Positions 1 through 6,622 of a DNA stretch of 6,622 bases are shown piece by piece; position 1 is the first letter of the stretch; every line of letters begins with the position of its first letter. The stretch lies in IMG/VR virus record IMGVR_UViG_3300005859_000094, positions 1 to 6,622 of that record, one strand, 5' to 3'. The notes below the pieces were generated by a model. It had not been told where the DNA came from. It searched no databases and was given only the letters and a program-made list of their open reading frames with translations. The translations under genes and the position numbers were made by a program.

Positions 1-346
1 GATAAAGATGATATTCCTTCAGTTGAAAATAGTTAGTTGAAATAGTTTTAATTTCGAGCAAATCGTTACCACAAATCAAGTCAATACGACCAGAGATTTT
101 CAGACCTTCTATTTCACCTTTAACTTCAATTTCAGCTTGACAATTCAATTTCTCAACAAAATAATTCTCAATTCTCTCATGATGAAGTTCTCCTAAGTCC
201 AAGACTAGCTCATTTATCCCTTTCTCAAATTCAAATTTTCTAGCAAAATATGATTTTCTAAAACAAACGCCAACTTCAGATGGAAATATTGTATTTTCTG
301 GATATTTGACTTTAAAACTTTGTCTTACAAAATCTTCATAATTCAT
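1..346 (-). CDS. Cas4-like (RecB/PD-(D/E)xK family) nuclease, SIRV2 gp19-like; 3' end lies outside the window
   Basis: Manual translation from ATG at 346: [34 protein letters not shown]...[10 protein letters not shown]...[18 protein letters not shown]...EYHLY. It shows Cas4-type motifs (PS-x-x-x-x-C-x-RK, G-x-x-x-H, GRID, EIK). An SD-like GGTGA lies at 353-357 (- strand), and the gene starts 2 nt after the ATPase stop. Confidence 0.9.
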
Positions 347-348
347 TC

Positions 349-1656
349 TTAATCACCAAGGTTTGAAAATCTCATGAAATTGTAAATCTGATTACAAATT
401 TCTTCTTTTTGTCTCTGACCGATTTGCAAATCTATATCTAGAGCTTGAAGTAAGATTTGTATGTCAATCGCTTGTTCTTGTCTTCTAGATTCCAAATTAT
501 CACAAACTATATAATTAGTTATATTGTTTATCTTTTGCTGAATTAGATCAATTAGAGCTTTCAAGATTGAGGGATATAGAACTCTAGCATTTATAATTTT
601 ATCATAAGTTTTCTTAATTGCAAGTTGGATAATATGAATTCTATCTAAAATTGCAGAAGTAAAAATTTGATAATTTACTAAATAATCTTCAACATCTGGA
701 TTTCTTAATTTGTTAATTGTCATAGAATATGGATTTCCGGCATAAATTATTGGAATACATTTTTGGATAGTTGAGGATTTTGATTCAGTTCCGGCTCCTC
801 TAGTCCATACACAATTTTCCAGACCGGTTGATAAAGTAGCATTTATCGCACCAAGTTCTTTTGTCGAAAATCCATCTTTCCAATTCTGGATTTCATCAAA
901 TATTAAGCCATTTGACAAAAACACTGCACCATACATATTATTTCTGGCATCATAAACTAGATTTGCATATGTTGGCGGTTCTGTATAATATCGGAAATTG
1001 AAAACTTCTTGCAAAATCATAAATGTTGTAGTTTTCCCAGTTCCACGATTTGAAATTTCTATATAGTTAATTTGACGTTTGGTAATTGGAGATTTAAAAA
1101 GTGGGAATAGACGTGGTAGAAATAGAAATATATCTTCAGTTTCCATTTTCATAACGTCATATCCGAATGCCTGAAATAGAAGAGCATACGTTTGATGTTC
1201 TTGATTTGCTAAGTCAAGAAGTTCTTTAGCAATTTCATAATTGTTCTGTGGTTCTATAGAATAAATATCATGAACATACCAGCCATTCACGCCTTTCCTA
1301 ATTTTGACAAACATATAAGAAGTTATTAAATTATAGAAATCTTCAGGATTATCAGCTATTTGATGAGGGTCAAAACTTCCTATAAATCCGTTTTGAAACT
1401 TAGCAATTACCATGTCATCTTTAACTTTAAAATTAGTAATTTTTGAGATAAATTTTATTTCATTATCAAATAGAAGATAGCTTTGGAAATATTGTTGATC
1501 AATTCCACGTTTGTAAGCTTTTAAAATCTCGATTTTCTTTCTCTCATCAATTTGTTTTCCAGAAAGAATGATGTTGAGAACTCTTTCAGTGTCTCGAGGG
1601 TTGTAAAAAAAAGAATGTTGTTTAACTTTTTCCAAGAACTGAGATGAACTGCTCAT
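349..1656 (-). CDS. AAA+ ATPase / putative helicase, SIRV2 gp18 (ORF436)-like; BrxL/MCM-related ATPase domain
   Basis: 435 aa with Walker A-like SNRGTGKTT, Walker B LIFDE, sensor-1-like YAGN and arginine-finger-like AILDRIH. It lies between the SSB and Cas4-like genes, as in rudiviruses. Confidence 0.88.
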
Positions 1657-1674: not shown

Positions 1675-1686
1675 TGACATTTTAAA
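1675..1686 (-). promoter_or_regulatory. TATA box + TGTCA element for the ATPase gene
   Basis: - strand TTTAAAATGTCA, ending 19 nt before the ATG at 1656. The TATA box overlaps the SSB stop codon. Confidence 0.7.
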
Positions 1687-2095
1687 ATTCATCTTCAACA
1701 TTCTTCTTTGTTTGTTTTTTCTGTTGTTTTTCTTCCTTTTGTGAAGATTTTTGTTGTTCTTCATTCTCTGTTAACTCTAATTCTTCTTCTTGAATTCTAT
1801 TGCCATTTCTTGGAGTAAACTTAACATATTCATTCAAAAGATCAGCATATTTTGTTAAGAATTCACTAATTAATCTTAAATCTTCAGCATCATTAGCAGT
1901 TATTCCAATTTGTTTCTTGAAATTATTTTGACTATGTATAGTCATTGAATATCTTATTTTTCCATTTTCTGGAATTGCATTTATTTGAACAACTATTCTC
2001 TTTAGACCTTTTATTTTTAAAATTCTAGATGCTGGTTTATTGTTTTGTTTTGCTTGTTGACTTAATTCATCAAATATTTCTTTTAAGGAAGCCAT
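1682..2095 (-). CDS. Single-stranded DNA-binding protein, SIRV2 gp17 (ORF131)-like
   Basis: 137 aa: basic N-terminal domain, low-complexity Q/K/E linker and acidic-aromatic C-terminus (VEDEF). First gene of the SSB-ATPase-nuclease block. SD-like GGGG at 2103-2106 (- strand). Confidence 0.82.
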   Translation of the reverse strand: MASLKEIFDELSQQAKQNNKPASRILKIKGLKRIVVQINAIPENGKIRYSMTIHSQNNFKKQIGITANDAEDLRLISEFLTKYADLLNEYVKFTPRNGNRIQEEELELTENEEQQKSSQKEEKQQKKQTKKNVEDEF

Positions 2096-2195: not shown

Positions 2196-2221
2196 TAATA
2201 TTCATTATATTTCAAATATGA
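2196..2221 (+). repeat. Dispersed copy of the repeat unit found at 6044-6190
   Basis: taatattcattatatttcaaatatga matches 6109-6134 (taatattctttatattttgaatatga) at 23 of 26 positions. Confidence 0.6.
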
Positions 2222-2255: not shown

Positions 2256-2543
2256 TTAAATTAAATTAAGGAATATTGATCTTATTATTTTTACCGGTTT
2301 GATATTATATTTTTCTGACAATTTTTGCAATTTTTCATAATATAAATCATCTATTGTAAAAAATACTCTCTCGTCATAATTATCTTGACTTTCTATTATT
2401 CTAAATTCTTTTTCTTCATTTAAGATTTTATCTATCTCTTGTTTTATTTGTTCTCGTTTTTCATAAAAAAGACTTTTATATCTTGAAGGTATACGCAATT
2501 CTATATACTTATTTCTTTGCCTTTTCATAATTTTATATATCAT
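2256..2543 (-). CDS. Ribbon-helix-helix DNA-binding protein, possibly with tandem RHH units
   Basis: The C-terminal ERVFFTIDDLYYEKLQKLSEKYNIKPVKIIRSIF fits the RHH pattern, and the N-terminal KYIELRIP strand-helix looks like a degenerate second unit. ATG at 2543 is preferred over the track's TTG at 2546 because it lies 18 nt from a TGTCA element. Confidence 0.7.
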   Translation of the reverse strand: MIYKIMKRQRNKYIELRIPSRYKSLFYEKREQIKQEIDKILNEEKEFRIIESQDNYDERVFFTIDDLYYEKLQKLSEKYNIKPVKIIRSIFLNLI

Positions 2544-2560
2544 CAACCTTCATTTAAACT

Positions 2561-2582: not shown

Positions 2583-2599
2583 GGTTTTTATTTTTGTTC

Positions 2600-2947
2600 A
2601 TGGATTGTAAAAAAGTTTTTAGCTATCACTTTCTTTATACTTATACATATTTTGTGACAATAACTACAAATTATCGTTACAATTCCACGATTCCGATTTA
2701 TAAAAAATTTCGGCAATATGTGTATAATCATGACTCATCAGCTCATATTTTTTCAGTTAAGGAATATACAACAAAATTTCACGGTCTTCATTATCATGTC
2801 CTAGTATTTACGAATAAAAAACTTGATTATTCTAGAGTTCACAAACATATGCCTCCGCATTCTGACATACATATTCAATTAGTCCCAAAAACAAAAAAAG
2901 ATATAAAAAAAGTTTTAACTTATATGTTAAAAAATCAAATCATTTAG
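2600..2947 (+). CDS. HUH-superfamily Rep initiator/nickase, SIRV1 ORF119 / SIRV2 gp16-like
   Basis: Motif I-like YFVTIT, HUH motif HGLHYHVLV and catalytic Tyr motif YMLK. ATG at 2600 is preferred over TTG at 2594 on promoter spacing. Confidence 0.9.
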   Translation: MDCKKVFSYHFLYTYTYFVTITTNYRYNSTIPIYKKFRQYVYNHDSSAHIFSVKEYTTKFHGLHYHVLVFTNKKLDYSRVHKHMPPHSDIHIQLVPKTKKDIKKVLTYMLKNQII

Positions 2948-3233
2948 ATTGTTGTTGGGAATTTTGGTTTTGTGAAACTTTTTTCTGAGCTAGATTATTT
3001 ACGTCTGAAAGTGTATCCATATTTAAAAGTGCATTTACGCCAAGAGTAGTTGTAGTTTTAATACTTTCAATTGCTGTAATAATAGCTTTTGTCATCTGAT
3101 CAATTGCATTTTGAAATGCCTCATTTGCTTGCTTTTGATTGTACAAATACACTATTTCACCTACAACATATGAACCTATCAATACGCTCATTAATATTAG
3201 AAATCCTTCTAGAGCTTCTGCAAATATGCTCAT
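2940..3233 (-). CDS. PVAP, virus-associated pyramid egress/lysis protein (SIRV2 P98 / STIV C92 family)
   Basis: 97 aa with an N-terminal TM helix followed by GEIVYLYNQKQANEAFQNAIDQMTK...AIESIK...G(V)NALLNMDTL, closely matching SIRV2 P98 as recalled. Confidence 0.9.
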   Translation of the reverse strand: MSIFAEALEGFLILMSVLIGSYVVGEIVYLYNQKQANEAFQNAIDQMTKAIITAIESIKTTTTLGVNALLNMDTLSDVNNLAQKKVSQNQNSQQQSK

Positions 3234-3331: not shown

Positions 3332-3493
3332 ATGGAGGCACAAACTAAGAAAGAAAAAGTAGTTTTCGGAATAAATATGGACAAAGAGCTAAAGAAGAAA
3401 TTGAAGGCTTATTGTGTTGAGCATGATATAACGATAACTGAAGCTATAGAAACTGCCATAAAAGAATATTTAGAAAAGAGGGGAGTTAAATGA
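3332..3493 (+). CDS. svtR: SvtR-like ribbon-helix-helix transcriptional repressor (53 aa; not in the ORF track)
   Basis: Manual translation MEAQTKKEKVVFGINMDKELKKKLKAYCVEHDITITEAIETAIKEYLEKRGVK. The pattern VFGIxMDKxLK...LKxYC...AIExAIKEYL matches SIRV1 P56b/SvtR as recalled. Confidence 0.85.
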   Translation: MEAQTKKEKVVFGINMDKELKKKLKAYCVEHDITITEAIETAIKEYLEKRGVK

Positions 3494-3648
3494 AGACGAT
3501 AACTATAAAAATTCCAGAAGATTTGTTAAAAGAATTAGATGAATATGCTAAAAAGCATGACCTTTATAGAGCTGAAGTTATAAGATCAGCAATTGAGGAA
3601 TTTCTGCAAACTCATGAAAGAGTTACTAAAGCAATGTATAAAAGCTAA
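3490..3648 (+). CDS. CopG-family ribbon-helix-helix regulator (52 aa; not in the ORF track)
   Basis: MKTITIKIPEDLLKELDEYAKKHDLYRAEVIRSAIEEFLQTHERVTKAMYKS is a typical CopG RHH. It has an ATGA overlap with the upstream gene and an SD-like GAGGGGAG at 3478-3485. Confidence 0.88.
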   Translation: MKTITIKIPEDLLKELDEYAKKHDLYRAEVIRSAIEEFLQTHERVTKAMYKS

Positions 3649-3682: not shown

Positions 3683-4198
3683 TTATTTAAATTTCGGTAA
3701 AGTAACATTTCTTTGATATTGATATTTTCCGTGATATGGTTTCTCAACTGGAGTTATTGTTTTAGCGAAAATTAGATGTAAAAATCTTTCTCCAACTTTT
3801 AATTTTACTGGAAATTCTGAGCCAACAACTTCAATTGTTAATTCGCCTTTAAATCCCGCATCAACAATAGTAGGCGGTATAGAAATTCCAAGTCTGGCAT
3901 AAGTAGAGCGTAGATTTACAAAAGCCATAACATCATTTGGAAGTTCTATATATTCCAGAGTTGTCATTAAAAGGTGTTCATGTGGTTGAACTATAATCTC
4001 GTTAGAATTTACAATTTCGTAAAAATCTTCTATATTGTCACCAGGCTCAAAAACTTTATCTGTCTTTTTTAATCTAGCAAATTGGTTTCCAATTCTTAAA
4101 TCTATGCCATTTTCCCTAACTATTTCTTCTGAATATGGTACTATTTTTATCCATTCTTTTTCCAGATAATATTTTAAATCTCTATCGCTTAAAATCAT
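3683..4198 (-). CDS. dUTPase / dCTP deaminase family (trimeric dUTPase fold), rudiviral dUTPase-like
   Basis: Motifs [39 protein letters not shown] and PYHGKYQ. Confidence 0.92.
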
Positions 4199-4225
4199 AG
4201 TTTATCGATTTCAAGATTCATTATA

Positions 4226-4238
4226 TGACAAATATATT
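4226..4238 (-). promoter_or_regulatory. TATA-like + TGTCA element for the dUTPase gene
   Basis: - strand AATATATTTGTCA, ending 28 nt before the ATG at 4198. Confidence 0.65.
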
Positions 4239-4519: not shown

Positions 4520-4762
4520 TTATACTTTTCTTTTTAATTTCTTAATTTCTGTTTCAAGTTCATCAATTCTTTCGTAAAGGTCATCAATCATATCTAATAG
4601 CCAAGTTAAAATTATAGCTAAAAAAATTGCTACAATTGCTGAAATTAGATCTATATCTTGTGAATTTTTTGACAAAATCTCTATAGAAAAAATTAAAAAC
4701 AAAGAATATATTGATATTAAAAGAGTTGAAAAAATATACAATAGATAAGTTAATTTATTCAT
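4520..4762 (-). CDS. Small membrane protein: two TM helices plus a C-terminal coiled coil
   Basis: 80 aa with two hydrophobic stretches (about residues 4-30 and 37-56), followed by the heptad-like DDLYERIDELETEIKKLKRKV. Confidence 0.75.
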   Translation of the reverse strand: MNKLTYLLYIFSTLLISIYSLFLIFSIEILSKNSQDIDLISAIVAIFLAIILTWLLDMIDDLYERIDELETEIKKLKRKV

Positions 4763-4826: not shown

Positions 4827-5609
4827 TTAAACAAGAGTTCTGCATAATGGACATTTATAAGTTCTTTTATATTTTTGTAGATAATAATTTGGGTCTTTCT
4901 GAATATCTCTGAAATATATTTTTTGATGATTATAAAATAGTCCTGAAACATTACCTCCTAGTTCTGTTTCAACATCTACAAATTTCTGAAAGAATTCGGG
5001 ATTCTTTAAAGCAAGTACTGCAAAGTCTGCTGGAGATTTAAACGCAGAACACCAGCATTCGTAAGCTTTGCCGTAAATATCATAAAGCGGATTCTTTTTT
5101 AAACCGTGAATTTTAATGTATTCTTCTACATCTTGTTCTGTAAAGTCATGAATTATTGCATAGCTCATAGCTTTAATTTGTTTGTTATAATAGATTTTCT
5201 GTGTTCTACTTTTTACCCAACTTTCATCTTTTCTAACGCCGGTAACTAATACAATTTCTTCTTTATCTTTTACGAAATCTTTTAAAGGTTTCAGTTTTAG
5301 ATAATATTTACACCATCTCCTTGTAATTGTAGGAAATCCAATTCTTTTTACTAGCTCAAAATAATCATATTTCGGGCCGATAATTGTCAATTCGACTCCT
5401 AATTCTTTACATGTTTCTTTTACATAATCTATAACTCCTGGAGTCGGAATTCCGGTATTTATAAATAATGCTTTCGTTTTTTCTGGGAAAATTGACTTTG
5501 TTAAATGTAGAGCAACTAACGAATCTTTTCCACCGCTGAACATTACATAAATTTCCTTGAAATTCTGTAAATCTTTTTTTGCTTCTTCAATTACTTTTTG
5601 CAGATCCAT
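4827..5609 (-). CDS. PAPS reductase family (CysH/DndC-like) PP-loop adenine nucleotide alpha-hydrolase
   Basis: 260 aa with PP-loop MFSGGKDS, FINTG, RRWCKYYLKLKP, TGVRKDES, a late ECWC and a C-terminal CPLC. Confidence 0.88.
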   Translation of the reverse strand: MDLQKVIEEAKKDLQNFKEIYVMFSGGKDSLVALHLTKSIFPEKTKALFINTGIPTPGVIDYVKETCKELGVELTIIGPKYDYFELVKRIGFPTITRRWCKYYLKLKPLKDFVKDKEEIVLVTGVRKDESWVKSRTQKIYYNKQIKAMSYAIIHDFTEQDVEEYIKIHGLKKNPLYDIYGKAYECWCSAFKSPADFAVLALKNPEFFQKFVDVETELGGNVSGLFYNHQKIYFRDIQKDPNYYLQKYKRTYKCPLCRTLV

Positions 5610-5629: not shown

Positions 5630-5642
5630 TGACAAATATTAA
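5630..5642 (-). promoter_or_regulatory. TATA-like + TGTCA element for the PP-loop enzyme gene
   Basis: - strand TTAATATTTGTCA, ending 21 nt before the ATG at 5609. It overlaps the stop codon of the upstream ORF. Confidence 0.65.
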
Positions 5643-5932
5643 CCTTCATTCTTTTGTCCACAAAAAACATTGATTTCGAATATGTTATGATTATATCTCC
5701 AATTCACTTTTATTAATTCTGGATATCTAAAAGTTTTAATTATATAATTTACAATTCCTAGACCCTTTTTTTCATAAAATTTTATACTCACATTCATTTT
5801 AATTTTTATAGATACAAGATTATCATCTTCTAGAACTAGAAAATCATAGACGTTGTCAGAGTAACGGCTTTTTAACCATTTAAAAACTTGAACTGTATAT
5901 TTTCTACATTCATAAATTGCTAAATCATTCAT
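5639..5932 (-). CDS. Hypothetical viral protein (97 aa, alpha/beta)
   Basis: Intact ORF with an ATG start and its own TATA-TGTCA promoter. No motif recognised. Confidence 0.75.
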   Translation of the reverse strand: MNDLAIYECRKYTVQVFKWLKSRYSDNVYDFLVLEDDNLVSIKIKMNVSIKFYEKKGLGIVNYIIKTFRYPELIKVNWRYNHNIFEINVFCGQKNEG

Positions 5933-5950
5933 ATTTTAAACTTTATTATG

Positions 5951-5963
5951 TGACAATTTAAAA
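5951..5963 (-). promoter_or_regulatory. TATA box + TGTCA element for the 97-aa ORF
   Basis: - strand TTTTAAATTGTCA, ending 19 nt before the ATG at 5932. Confidence 0.75.
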
Positions 5964-6043
5964 GTTCAATATTAATTTAGATATAGGATATTTATCATTG
6001 TGTAATTCTCGAAATTATTATAATTTTTATGAATTCTAATTTC

Positions 6044-6190
6044 ACAATTCATATTCATAATATTTTGAATATTGCTTTTTTTCTTACTTGTGAAACAAAA
6101 TTGACAATTAATATTCTTTATATTTTGAATATGAGTTTGAGTTTGATTTTTTTGTCAATTTTAACAATTAATATTCATCATATTTTGAAT
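6044..6190. repeat. Three imperfect 27-bp direct repeats at an exact 60-bp period, separated by unique 33-bp spacers
   Basis: acaattcatattcataatattttgaat (6044-6070), acaattaatattctttatattttgaat (6104-6130) and acaattaatattcatcatattttgaat (6164-6190). Confidence 0.85.
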
Positions 6191-6197
6191 TAGACAT

Positions 6198-6208
6198 GAA
6201 AATTTAAA
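6198..6208 (+). promoter_or_regulatory. BRE/TATA promoter of the major capsid protein gene (no TGTCA)
   Basis: GAAAA followed by TTTAAA (6203-6208), 33 nt upstream of the ATG at 6241. Confidence 0.6.
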
Positions 6209-6240
6209 TTATAGAAAAAAGATTTGATAATTGAACAAAA

Positions 6241-6622
6241 ATGCCAAGAGGGCATACACCAAGAAGTTATTCGCAAAGGTACGCGAAATGGCAAGCAAAG
6301 TTTACTGCATTTAGCAATCCAACTGTAGCGTCAACAATCTTAACTAACGTAGCTCCAGTTGCTCAAGAGAATTTCCAGACTAATGTACCTAAATTTGTCT
6401 CTGTAAATGAGCAAGTCAGTGCTGTATTAACTCAGTACGGTATAACTGGGCCACAAAGGGCAATTTATCAGGGTTACGGTCTAAAAATTGCTAGAGCTTT
6501 AAATAGAATTGGGTCTGGGCCAGCTCTAGTAAACATGATTAATGGTCTCAAAGCTTATTACATAAATGCCTTTAACGCTAATCCAGAAGTTTTAGATGCT
6601 GTAACTAACATTATAACCGGTT
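6241..6622 (+). CDS. Rudivirus major capsid protein (SIRV2 P134/gp26-like); runs off the window end
   Basis: Manual translation MPRGHTPRSYSQRYAKWQAKFTAFSNPTVASTILTNVAPVAQENFQTNVPKFVSVNEQVSAVLTQYGITGPQRAIYQGYGLKIARALNRIGSGPALVNMINGLKAYYINAFNANPEVLDAVTNIITG, highly similar to the SIRV coat protein as recalled. Confidence 0.97.
   Translation, partial: MPRGHTPRSYSQRYAKWQAKFTAFSNPTVASTILTNVAPVAQENFQTNVPKFVSVNEQVSAVLTQYGITGPQRAIYQGYGLKIARALNRIGSGPALVNMINGLKAYYINAFNANPEVLDAVTNIITG

What the first reader, a model, noticed from the sequence alone, without database searches (positions are those of the whole stretch)
6044..6192. CRISPR-like architecture: three palindromic 27-bp repeats at an exact 60-bp period upstream of the capsid gene
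Seen: consensus ACAATT(A/C)ATATTC(A/T)T(A/T/C)ATATTTTGAAT at 6044, 6104 and 6164, with unrelated 33-bp spacers. Each has a dyad core ATATTCA-N8-TGAATAT (perfect in copy 1, 6051-6072). The last copy ends about 12 bp before the capsid TATA box. The repeat does not end in the ATTGAAAG typical of Sulfolobales CRISPR repeats, so it is not called CRISPR. Inference, as alternatives: (i) a phased operator array for a dimeric regulator switching between late capsid and divergent early genes; (ii) iteron-like internal origin or packaging signal; (iii) a repeat-spacer ncRNA processed into about 60-nt units, such as a viral mini-array or Cas-protein decoy; (iv) tandem degenerate - strand promoters, since copy 2 reads TATTAATTGTCA.
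Basis: partly seen in the sequence, partly recalled or inferred. Interest (0 to 1): 0.8.

Follow-up and report, generated by a model that had tools for sequence, protein, structure and literature searches.

The report
Triplicated capsid-promoter operator palindrome, rudivirus
The three evenly spaced repeats are not CRISPR-like: they are three copies of a 22-bp palindromic regulator-binding site that rod-shaped archaeal viruses place just upstream of their capsid and other virion-gene promoters, and this virus carries one copy more than any relative examined.

Summary
Three repeats start at 6044, 6104 and 6164 with exact 60-bp spacing, 10-12 bp before the TATA box of a rudivirus major capsid gene (ATG at 6241). 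The core of each repeat is a 22-bp dyad (6051-6072, 6111-6132, 6171-6192).

The CRISPR analogy fails. The spacers are conserved at the same position in related viruses. The repeats match no Rfam family, and they lie between two divergent promoters.

The element is a variant of the palindrome ATATACATnATATnATGTATAT. It sits at the same distance from the capsid TATA box in SIRV1/2/3 (one copy), in most Yellowstone rudiviruses and ARV3 (two copies, usually 60 bp apart), and in MRV1 and SSRV1. It recurs upstream of BRE/TATA at five to seven other promoters per genome, mostly virion and modification genes: 6 sites against 0.01 expected in SIRV4.

So it is a shared operator or upstream activating site for a dimeric factor. 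Copy number (1, 2 or 3) probably varies by unequal recombination between copies.

The binding protein is not identified. Host Sta1 footprints this region in SIRV1. The published SvtR and aCcr1 motifs do not match it.

Moderately interesting: a variant of a known kind of element.

The parts
6051..6072 (.). Palindrome copy 1 (distal-most), ATATTCATAATATTTTGAATAT, 10/11 symmetric pairs. This is the extra copy, absent from all relatives examined.
   Evidence: Alignment A1 shows a 60-nt insertion here relative to 11 related capsid promoters.
6073..6110 (.). Spacer 1 (38 nt between dyads), T-rich, ending in the conserved CAAT...ACAATT flank.
   Evidence: Most similar to the inter-palindrome spacers of L063, L054 and L061 (66-71%, z about 4). 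Only 55% identical to the window's own spacer 2.
6111..6132 (.). Palindrome copy 2 (8/11 pairs), orthologous to the 'distal' copy of two-copy rudiviruses.
6133..6170 (.). Spacer 2, conserved with relatives (TTTGAGTTTGA... block).
   Evidence: 74-79% identical to the spacers of L057, SIRV4 (L070), L054 and L055, z 6-7. BLAST of 6071-6163 hits only the homologous capsid-promoter position of SIRV4-type viruses, plus chance hits.
6171..6192 (.). Palindrome copy 3 (proximal, 7/11 pairs), in the canonical position 10 bp upstream of the TATA box.
   Evidence: Wherever a proximal copy is present, it starts 70 nt before the capsid ATG: the two-copy contigs, SIRV1/2/3 and the single-copy SIRV10-like contigs. 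ARV1 (L078), SRV (L081) and SBRV1 have none.
6196..6213 (+). BRE-like ATGAAAA plus TATA box TTTAAATTATA of the capsid promoter.
   Evidence: Homologous to the SIRV1 promoter-134 core (GTGAAAATTTATTAA), which lies inside the Reg2 oligonucleotide and protected region 2 of PMC1635249.
6241..6622 (+). Major capsid protein gene, cut by the contig end.
   Evidence: Pfam PF12193, E 1.8e-71. 82-92% identical to rudiviral capsid proteins.
5951..5966 (-). Divergent promoter (TATA plus GTC motif, read on the minus strand) of the 97-aa gene 5639-5932, a homolog of SIRV2 ORF103c.
   Evidence: The block TGACAATTTAA(A/T)AGTT is conserved in most relatives. Gene homology. The GTC motif of SIRV promoters is cited in PMC5569661.
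2198..2219 (-). Fourth site of the same window-type palindrome (2 mismatches), 60 bp upstream of the TATA box of the gp17-like gene (1682-2095, minus strand).
   Evidence: A matching site stands upstream of the gp17-like gene in L018 (6035-6056) and L057 (422-443).
3490..3648 (+). RHH protein, homolog of SIRV2 gp21/ORF59b (aCcr1 clade). A candidate binder, not shown.
   Evidence: Pfam RHH_1. Alignments: the beta-strand is conserved across genera, as the palindrome is.
3332..3493 (+). RHH protein, SvtR (SIRV1 56B) homolog. A candidate binder, disfavoured.
   Evidence: Pfam 56B_RHH. PDB 2KEL, E 1e-15. Its beta-strand does not co-vary with site type. The published SvtR consensus does not match the repeats.

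Best explanation
The three repeats are three tandem copies of a cis-regulatory palindrome conserved in rudiviruses. Its general form is ATAT-(A/T)CAT-n-ATAT-n-(A/T)TG(A/T)-ATAT. It lies immediately upstream of the BRE/TATA of the major-capsid-protein promoter and of several other promoters, mostly for virion-structural and modification genes. It most likely binds a dimeric DNA-binding protein (or a dimer of dimers): the two specific blocks, (A/T)CAT and its mirror, are 10 bp apart, one helical turn. The proximal copy abuts the BRE. Occupancy there most likely helps TBP/TFB recruitment (activation). The upstream copies add high-affinity sites that load the weaker proximal one cooperatively. Copy number (1, 2 or 3) changes by unequal homologous recombination between copies. 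This virus carries the three-copy allele, with a T at dyad position 5 and an A at position 18. Shown here: the repeats, their conservation, their fixed position, their recurrence at many promoters, and the 60-nt insertion. Inferred: protein binding, the sign of regulation, cooperativity and the recombination origin.
For: (1) Position: where a proximal copy is present it starts 70 nt before the capsid ATG, that is 10 bp before the TATA box. This holds for the INPHARED rudiviruses that carry one and for the IMG/VR regions that carry one, out of 27 distinct regions in all. (2) Copy number: one copy in SIRV1/2/3, SIRV10-like contigs, MRV1 and SSRV1. Two copies 60 bp apart in SIRV4/8/9, V3/V60/V65, many IMG/VR contigs and ARV3, which belongs to a different genus and comes from Italy. 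Three copies only in the window. (3) Regulon: the palindrome gives 6 sites at <=2 mismatches against 0.01 expected in SIRV4, 8 sites at <=3 mismatches against 0.03 in SIRV2, 8 in SIRV1 and 7 in ARV3. All 15 SIRV1 and ARV3 sites are intergenic against the annotation, and the SIRV2 and SIRV4 coordinates likewise fall between annotated genes. The promoter-proximal ones end 25-65 nt before an ATG, and extra upstream copies lie about 100-155 nt away; for the SIRV2 and SIRV4 promoters whose sequence was read, the site ends about 6-22 bp before a TATA box. Targets are MCP, ORF399, ORF110, ORF562/564, the ORF488 homolog, the ORF1070 homolog, a glycosyltransferase and a methyltransferase. (4) Dyad positions 5 and 18 tend to change together: A/T in 8 distinct sites, T/A in 4, A/A in 3, T/C in 1. 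ARV3 uses ACCT...AGGT. (5) Spacers and flanks diverge faster than the palindromes. (6) Literature: host Sta1 protects about 20 bp roughly 30 nt upstream of the SIRV1 promoter-134 core and stimulates transcription when TBP or TFB is limiting (PMC1635249). Its proposed consensus maps inside the palindrome at -70..-55. Promoters 134 and 399 were singled out there as probably regulated, and both carry the palindrome. (7) Origin: copy 1 plus spacer 1 is an exact 60-nt insertion. One-copy alleles, the expected reciprocal product, exist. Other rudivirus contigs come from the same sample, 3300005859.
Against: No binding or expression data exist for this virus. Sta1 is now regarded as a rather unspecific AT-rich DNA binder of the Lrs14 family (PMC11841832), so its footprint may not reflect the real factor. 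The paper's figure with the exact protected bases is not held, so the overlap is inferred. Spacing between copies is not uniform across promoters (58, 60, 72, 83-84, 114 bp), which argues against strict helical phasing. Sites with A and with T at position 5, and hybrids, coexist in one contig (L018), so the window's altered half-site may be tolerated degeneracy rather than a changed specificity. The sign of regulation rests only on position upstream of the BRE and on the Sta1 in-vitro result. Kessler 2004 and Guilliere 2009 could not be read, so prior description of the palindrome cannot be excluded.
Confidence: 0.7

Rival explanations
1. Same sites, opposite sign. A virus-encoded ribbon-helix-helix repressor nucleates on the best, most distal palindrome and spreads cooperatively over the weaker proximal copies to the BRE/TATA. 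This holds capsid expression back until the repressor is titrated.
For: Palindrome quality falls toward the promoter: 10/11, 8/11, 7/11 pairs. In relatives the distal copy is the better dyad. The review PMC5569661 describes this model for SvtR and AvtR. The window encodes an SvtR homolog, a gp21-like RHH and a homolog of SIRV4 gp10, which PMC9976892 lists as an RHH cluster.
Against: The published SvtR consensus and the aCcr1 box AGTATTA do not match the repeats. The SvtR-like beta-strand is identical in the window and L058 although their sites differ, and it differs between SIRV and MRV1/SSRV1 although their sites are alike. The sites end before the BRE rather than covering TATA. In vitro, the only factor tested on this region activates.
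Confidence: 0.25
2. The palindrome is functional, but the third copy is a neutral by-product of unequal recombination with no added regulatory effect.
For: Only 1 of 27 distinct IMG/VR upstream regions, and none of the INPHARED rudiviruses, has three copies. One-copy viruses such as SIRV1, SIRV2 and SIRV10 are viable isolates. The insertion is exactly one unit.
Against: Copy 1 is the best dyad of the three, and spacer 1 has diverged from spacer 2 (55% identity). The insertion is therefore not very recent, and the palindrome has been kept intact.
Confidence: 0.25
3. A virus-borne CRISPR-like mini-array, or a repeat-spacer RNA processed into 60-nt units (a Cas decoy).
For: Superficial geometry only: 22-27-nt repeats, 33-38-nt spacers, 60-bp period.
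Against: Spacers are conserved at the same locus in other viruses. Repeats are imperfect. No CRISPR-DR or other Rfam match at E<=10. The array lies upstream of the capsid TATA, between divergent promoters. The same repeat occurs singly at other promoters.
Confidence: 0.02
4. Iterons of an internal replication origin, or a genome-packaging signal.
For: Repeated AT-rich dyads in the most AT-rich part of the window: 17% G+C against 27% overall.
Against: The element is found at 6-8 promoters per genome, mostly within about 65 nt of a start codon and, where the sequence was read, just upstream of a TATA box. It is not at one locus. By established knowledge, rudiviral replication starts at the terminal repeats through the Rep nickase. 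No Rep gene adjoins the array.
Confidence: 0.04
5. The repeats encode a 54-aa protein with a 20-residue internal repeat (ORF 6029-6193, in frame because 60 = 20 codons).
For: The ORF exists and spans all three copies.
Against: No Pfam match. No third-codon-position excess of variability across 12 aligned relatives: entropy 0.71/0.71/0.71. Relatives keep only a 22-24-codon open stretch that starts at the ATG inside the palindrome, or none at all. The ORF lies between two divergent promoters, and no promoter or ribosome-binding site of its own was looked for.
Confidence: 0.02

Closest known systems
Upstream Sta1-protected region of the SIRV1 capsid promoter 134 (Kessler et al. 2006, PMC1635249)
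   Same: Orthologous promoter. An approximately 20-bp protected region about 30 nt upstream of the core promoter with an 'imperfect palindrome'. The published consensus ATNT-N8-WNAT maps inside the SIRV1 palindrome. The binder is a dimer, and it activates when TBP/TFB is limiting.
   Different: That work described a degenerate 16-bp consensus at one site. It did not describe the 22-bp palindrome, its recurrence across promoters or its tandem copies. Sta1 is now viewed as a low-specificity Lrs14-type protein. The window has three copies with altered half-sites, and the first two do not all fit the Sta1 consensus.
Regularly spaced palindromic boxes of archaeal Lrp-type regulators (Ss-LrpB three-box control region in S. 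solfataricus; Ptr2 upstream activating sites in M. jannaschii). Recalled from my own knowledge, not tested here.
   Same: Several dyad-symmetric boxes at regular spacing upstream of BRE/TATA. Cooperative occupancy. Activation by helping TBP recruitment (Ptr2).
   Different: Different consensus and spacing: about 42 bp for Ss-LrpB against 60 bp here. No Lrp-family gene is present in the window, and no binding has been shown.
RHH operators of archaeal viruses (SvtR of SIRV1, AvtR of AFV6; review PMC5569661)
   Same: Imperfect inverted repeats in viral promoters. High-affinity distal plus degenerate proximal sites. RHH genes are encoded in the window.
   Different: The published SvtR and AvtR consensus sequences differ. 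The SvtR consensus finds no match in the repeats at <=2 mismatches. Those proteins act mainly as repressors.
aCcr1 box (AGTATTA / ccr-2 box TGTATTAT) bound by SIRV2 gp21 (PMC9976892)
   Same: The right half of some SIRV2 palindromes reads TGTATTA (ORF399 and ORF564 promoters). gp21 binds the SIRV2 gp17 promoter, and the window has a palindrome upstream of its gp17-like gene.
   Different: The window repeats contain no AGTATTA or TGTATTAT. Binding of gp21 to the capsid promoter was not reported.
CRISPR arrays, including virus-borne mini-arrays
   Same: Repeat-spacer geometry with a period near 60 bp.
   Different: Conserved spacers, imperfect repeats, promoter location, no Rfam CRISPR-DR match, and single copies elsewhere in related genomes.

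Membership tests
CRISPR array | Near-identical direct repeats | tested here: not met
   36-nt units are 81-86% identical. The dyads differ at several positions.
CRISPR array | Spacers unique and unrelated to the homologous locus in relatives (turnover) | tested here: not met
   Spacer 2 is 74-79% identical to the spacer at the same place in SIRV4, L054, L055 and L057. Spacer 1 is 66-71% identical to L063, L054 and L061. The alignment is collinear.
CRISPR array | Repeat belongs to a known CRISPR repeat family | tested here: not met
   No Rfam match to any CRISPR-DR model at E<=10 in 5800-6400.
CRISPR array | Transcribed from a leader and processed by Cas6 | not testable with these tools
   No RNA data. 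The array lies between divergent promoters, upstream of the capsid TATA. There are no cas genes in the 6.6-kb contig.
Transcription-factor operator / upstream activating site of an archaeal promoter | Dyad symmetry compatible with a dimeric binder | tested here: met
   10/11, 8/11 and 7/11 symmetric pairs. Perfect 22-bp palindromes occur in SIRV4 and L018.
Transcription-factor operator / upstream activating site of an archaeal promoter | Fixed position relative to BRE/TATA | tested here: met
   The proximal copy ends 10 bp before the capsid TATA wherever a proximal copy is present. At the SIRV2 and SIRV4 promoters read, the site ends about 6-22 bp before a TATA box; the ORF110 and ORF335 core promoters were not assigned.
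Transcription-factor operator / upstream activating site of an archaeal promoter | Recurs at several promoters of the genome far above chance (a regulon) | tested here: met
   SIRV4 6 against 0.01 expected, SIRV2 8 against 0.03, SIRV1 8, ARV3 7. The SIRV1 and ARV3 sites were checked against the annotation and are all intergenic.
Transcription-factor operator / upstream activating site of an archaeal promoter | Conserved across related genomes while flanks diverge | tested here: met
   The invariant columns of alignment A1 cluster in the palindromes and the core promoter. The element is present in Icerudivirus, Usarudivirus and Hoswirudivirus.
Transcription-factor operator / upstream activating site of an archaeal promoter | Specific binding by a protein, with an effect on transcription | not testable with these tools
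   Only indirect evidence: the Sta1 footprint and activation on the orthologous SIRV1 promoter (PMC1635249).
Sta1 (Lrs14-type) binding site | Match to the published consensus ATNT-N8-WNAT | tested here: inconclusive
   Matches overlap copy 1 (6039-6054, 6057-6072), copy 3 (6182-6197) and the core promoter (6208-6223), but not copy 2. The consensus is very degenerate in 17% G+C DNA.
SvtR operator | Match to ATnnTTCAAnAnnnnnAAAATG | tested here: not met
   No match at <=2 mismatches anywhere in the window.
Iteron-type replication origin | A single locus of repeats bound by the initiator, next to the rep gene or an unwinding element | tested here: not met
   The same element stands at 6-8 promoters per genome. 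The Rep-like gene of the window (2594-2947) is 3 kb away.

The most novel reading that the evidence does not exclude
The 22-bp palindrome may be a so far undescribed, family-wide signature of 'virion-module' promoters in Rudiviridae. It would be read by a conserved virus-encoded factor (the essential gp21-like RHH protein is the best candidate) rather than by host Sta1. The number of tandem copies would act as an evolvable dial for capsid output that changes by unequal recombination.
Probability: 0.3. Interest if true: 0.55.

Novelty: new variant of a known kind. Interest (0 to 1): 0.38.

Why it matters
Transcription of rudiviruses has been described as barely chronological, with a few regulated promoters (PMC1635249). 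How the very highly expressed capsid gene and the other virion genes are co-ordinated is not settled. A sharply defined 22-bp palindrome shared by those promoters across three genera and four host genera gives a concrete bait for finding the regulator. Natural 1-, 2- and 3-copy alleles offer a ready-made dose series for testing cooperativity at an archaeal promoter. It also shows that a CRISPR-like repeat-spacer geometry in a virus can be a promoter array, which is useful for curating virus-borne 'mini-arrays'.

Tried and rejected
1. CRISPR or ncRNA reading: rejected.

2. Coding reading of ORF 6029-6193: rejected.

3. Metagenome scan for further window-type arrays with ATATTTTGAAT-N40-65-ATATTTTGAAT. 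None of the fetched loci encodes any window protein.

4. IMG/VR scan with the 20-nt window pattern. It found the window itself (the window is the whole contig IMGVR_UViG_3300005859_000094), two rudiviral contigs, and 37 single matches that were not examined further and are taken to be chance hits.

5. Exact scan of 185,579 representative genomes for the canonical palindrome: 18 hits, none in Sulfolobales. There is therefore no sign of an identical host site, but degenerate host sites were not tested.

6. Co-variation of site type with the beta-strand of the SvtR-like and gp21-like RHH proteins. There is no co-variation for the SvtR-like protein. The result is uninformative for the gp21-like protein, whose strand is conserved everywhere.

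7. PDB sequence search for the 96-aa protein: nothing.

8. Kessler 2004, Guilliere 2009 and the SIRV2 transcriptome papers are not in the library. Promoter kinetics and any earlier mention of the palindrome could not be checked.

9. A fold of the repeats was not run: one item exceeded the length limit, and the test was judged non-decisive.

Full report
WHAT THE WINDOW IS

The window is the complete 6,622-bp IMG/VR contig IMGVR_UViG_3300005859_000094. It is a fragment of a rudivirus. Its DNA aligns over 97% of a 1-kb probe at about 73% identity with the Yellowstone viruses SIRV4/5/6/7/11, and more weakly with all other Rudiviridae.

Genes:
- 349-1656(-): Lon/BrxL-like ATPase (SIRV2 ORF436).
- 1682-2095(-): PHA01746-like protein (SIRV2 ORF131b/gp17).
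- 2256-2546(-): 96-aa homolog of SIRV4 gp10.
- 2594-2947(+): '117-like' Rep-related protein.
- 2940-3233(-): pyramid-forming protein.
- 3332-3493(+): SvtR homolog (PDB 2KEL, E 1e-15).
- 3490-3648(+): CopG-type RHH homologous to SIRV2 gp21.
- 3683-4198(-): dCTP deaminase/dUTPase.
- 4520-4762(-): small membrane-like protein.
- 4827-5609(-): PAPS-reductase-like gene.
- 5639-5932(-): homolog of SIRV2 ORF103c.
- From 6241(+): the major capsid protein (PF12193, E 1.8e-71), cut by the contig end.

THE OBSERVATION

The repeat finder gives three 36-nt copies at 6035, 6095 and 6155, with spacing 60 and 60. The informative core is a 22-bp dyad at 6051-6072, 6111-6132 and 6171-6192, with 10, 8 and 7 of 11 symmetric pairs.

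The 20-nt pattern occurs three times exactly. With up to 3 mismatches there are 6 matches against 0.23 expected, and no shuffle out of 200 reaches 6. Copy 3 ends 10 bp before TTTAAATT (6203-6210), which is homologous to the mapped SIRV1 promoter-134 core.

WHAT IT IS

I compared the capsid-upstream regions of 12 INPHARED rudiviruses and 27 distinct IMG/VR regions. Most relatives carry, starting 70 nt before the capsid ATG, a version of ATATACATnATATnATGTATAT. ARV1, SRV and SBRV1 have no such element there.

Copy number varies:
- One copy: the Icelandic SIRV1/2/3, SIRV10-like contigs, MRV1 and SSRV1.
- Two copies exactly 60 bp apart: SIRV4, 8, 9, V3/V60/V65 and many contigs. ARV3 of Acidianus from Italy also has two copies 60 bp apart.
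- Two copies at other spacings: 72 bp in L056 and 83-84 bp in L059/L018.
- Three copies: only the window.

Alignment A1 places window copies 2 and 3 on the distal and proximal copies of the relatives. It shows copy 1 plus spacer 1 as a clean 60-nt insertion. The invariant columns cluster in the palindromes (an ATAT-N5-ATAT-N5-ATAT skeleton) and in the core promoter.

A REGULON, NOT A CAPSID-ONLY FEATURE

The palindrome is not private to the capsid promoter.
- SIRV4: 6 sites at <=2 mismatches against 0.01 expected.
- SIRV2: 8 sites at <=3 mismatches against 0.03 expected.
- SIRV1: 8 sites. ARV3: 7 sites. All of these were checked against the annotation and are intergenic.

The sequence context is stereotyped. 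For most of the SIRV2 and SIRV4 promoters read, a CAAC/CACA-type left flank is followed by the palindrome, then about 6-22 bp, then BRE/TATA (TTTATTTA-like), and in most cases the rudiviral GTC motif. The promoter-proximal sites end 25-65 nt before the ATG; extra upstream copies lie about 100-155 nt away.

Targets are the capsid gene, ORF399, ORF110, ORF562/564 (two copies 58 bp apart), the ORF488/510 homolog, the ORF1070 homolog in ARV3, glycosyltransferase ORF335, a methyltransferase, and the ORF268/269 divergent pair. This is largely the virion-structure and modification module.

In the window a fourth site (2198-2219) lies 60 bp upstream of the TATA box of the gp17-like gene. A matching site stands before the same gene in L018 and L057.

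THE WINDOW'S HALF-SITE

The window's copies read ATATTCAT...TTGAATAT rather than ATATACAT...ATGTATAT. Positions 5 and 18 are dyad partners and changed together. Across 16 distinct full sites the combinations are A/T 8, T/A 4, A/A 3 and T/C 1. ARV3 uses ACCT...AGGT.

This symmetric behaviour is what a dimeric reader would impose. However, A-type, T-type and hybrid sites coexist within one contig (L018). I therefore treat position 5/18 as a tolerated A-or-T position, not as proof of a new specificity.

WHY NOT CRISPR, RNA, ORIGIN OR PROTEIN

- Spacers are conserved. Spacer 2 is 74-79% identical (z 6-7) to the spacer at the same place in L057, SIRV4, L054 and L055. Spacer 1 is 66-71% identical (z about 4) to those of L063, L054 and L061.
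- A BLAST of spacer1-repeat2-spacer2 finds only the homologous capsid-promoter position, plus chance hits.
- There is no Rfam match at E<=10.
- The array lies between a minus-strand promoter (5951-5966) and the capsid TATA box.
- An origin or packaging role is hard to reconcile with 6-8 promoter-bound copies per genome.
- ORF 6029-6193 stays open because one unit is 20 codons. It has no Pfam match and no codon-position periodicity in 12 relatives. Relatives have only a 22-24-codon remnant, or nothing.

HOW IT LIKELY WORKS

Shown: a conserved dyad at a fixed distance upstream of BRE/TATA, shared by a set of promoters.

Inferred: a dimeric factor, or a dimer of dimers, binds it. The (A/T)CAT blocks are 10 bp apart, so they face the same side of the helix. 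From the proximal copy the factor would contact or stabilise TFB/TBP.

The only experimental data concern the orthologous SIRV1 promoter. Host Sta1 binds as a dimer. It protects the core promoter and about 20 bp roughly 30 nt upstream, and it stimulates transcription when TBP or TFB is limiting (PMC1635249). Its consensus falls at -70..-55, inside the palindrome. Promoters 134 and 399, chosen there as probably regulated, are both palindrome-bearing.

Sta1 is now considered a low-specificity Lrs14-type protein (PMC11841832). The palindrome is conserved in viruses of Sulfolobus, Saccharolobus, Metallosphaera and Acidianus, and the exact palindrome is absent from representative Sulfolobales genomes. 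A conserved viral factor is therefore at least as plausible.

Among the candidates, the SvtR-like RHH is disfavoured. The gp21-like RHH stays open: its beta-strand is conserved across genera, and SIRV2 gp21 binds the gp17 promoter (PMC9976892). But its published box AGTATTA is not in the repeats.

The falling dyad quality toward the promoter also fits a repressor that nucleates distally and spreads (the model in PMC5569661). I keep this as the main rival.

ORIGIN OF THE THIRD COPY

Copy 1's left flank matches the left flank of the distal copy in L055. Spacer 2 matches the L055/L054/SIRV4 spacer. Spacer 1 resembles the L063/L061 class more than it resembles spacer 2.

A single unequal crossover would explain this. 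It would join the proximal palindrome of one genome to the distal palindrome of another, and it would give exactly this structure while preserving the 60-bp register. The reciprocal one-copy product exists in SIRV10-like contigs. Other rudivirus lineages (L055, L061, L077) come from the same sample, 3300005859. This is inference.

COMPARISON AND VERDICT

Functionally the array resembles multi-box archaeal control regions and the RHH operators of archaeal viruses. It is orthologous to the Sta1-protected upstream region of SIRV1 P134. It fails every testable CRISPR criterion.

I could not find the 22-bp palindrome or its regulon described in the papers available.

The window's contribution is a three-copy, altered-half-site allele. 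I classify it as a new variant of a known kind, interest about 0.4.

Noticed in passing
window 4827-5609 (-): A PAPS-reductase-like gene (Pfam PF01507, E 1.6e-24) sits between the 80-aa gene and the ORF103c homolog. tblastn found no counterpart in any of the other rudiviral loci compared, so it looks like a lineage-specific auxiliary gene insertion.
   Followed up: partly
window 5979-5991, and about -200 from the capsid ATG in relatives (e.g. L070, L064): A second conserved element lies in the middle of the divergent intergenic region: GATATAG(G/T)ATAT. It is present as two direct ATATAGTATA repeats in SIRV1, SIRV2 and SIRV4. It resembles but does not equal the aCcr1 box AGTATTA.
   Followed up: no
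window 2198-2219; L018 6035-6056; L057 422-443: The window-type palindrome also stands about 60 bp upstream of the TATA box of the gp17-like (ssDNA-binding protein family) gene in Yellowstone-type contigs. No such site was found there in SIRV2, where gp21 is reported to bind the gp17 promoter.
   Followed up: partly
L018 3521-3542, 6035-6056, 10536-10557: One contig carries a T-type, a hybrid and an A-type palindrome at three different promoters. The A/T difference at dyad position 5/18 is therefore not lineage-exclusive.
   Followed up: partly
window 6029-6193 (+): A 54-codon ORF with a 20-residue internal repeat is created by the 60-bp period. There is no coding signal, so it is probably spurious.
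   Followed up: yes
window 2256-2546 (-): This 96-aa protein is a homolog of SIRV4 gp10, which PMC9976892 lists as a separate RHH cluster. It appears to contain two beta-strand/helix units, has no solved homolog and no Pfam hit. A tblastn match in SIRV2 (9477-9722) falls in a stretch left unannotated in AJ344259.
   Followed up: partly
window 106-152 and 21-47: Short tandem repeats (18-nt period x2.5; 13-nt period x2) lie at the left end of the contig, downstream of the ATPase gene.
   Followed up: no
L223 22346-23191, L225 19288-20136, L226 21908-22720: The Hoswirudiviruses ARV3, MRV1 and SSRV1 are annotated as encoding a transcription factor B homolog. They carry the same capsid-promoter palindrome, so a viral TFB could be relevant to how the element is read in that genus.
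   Followed up: no
window 4216-4235 (-): A weak 3-mismatch match to the repeat pattern lies 17 nt upstream of the dUTPase start codon. It may simply be that gene's core promoter.
   Followed up: no
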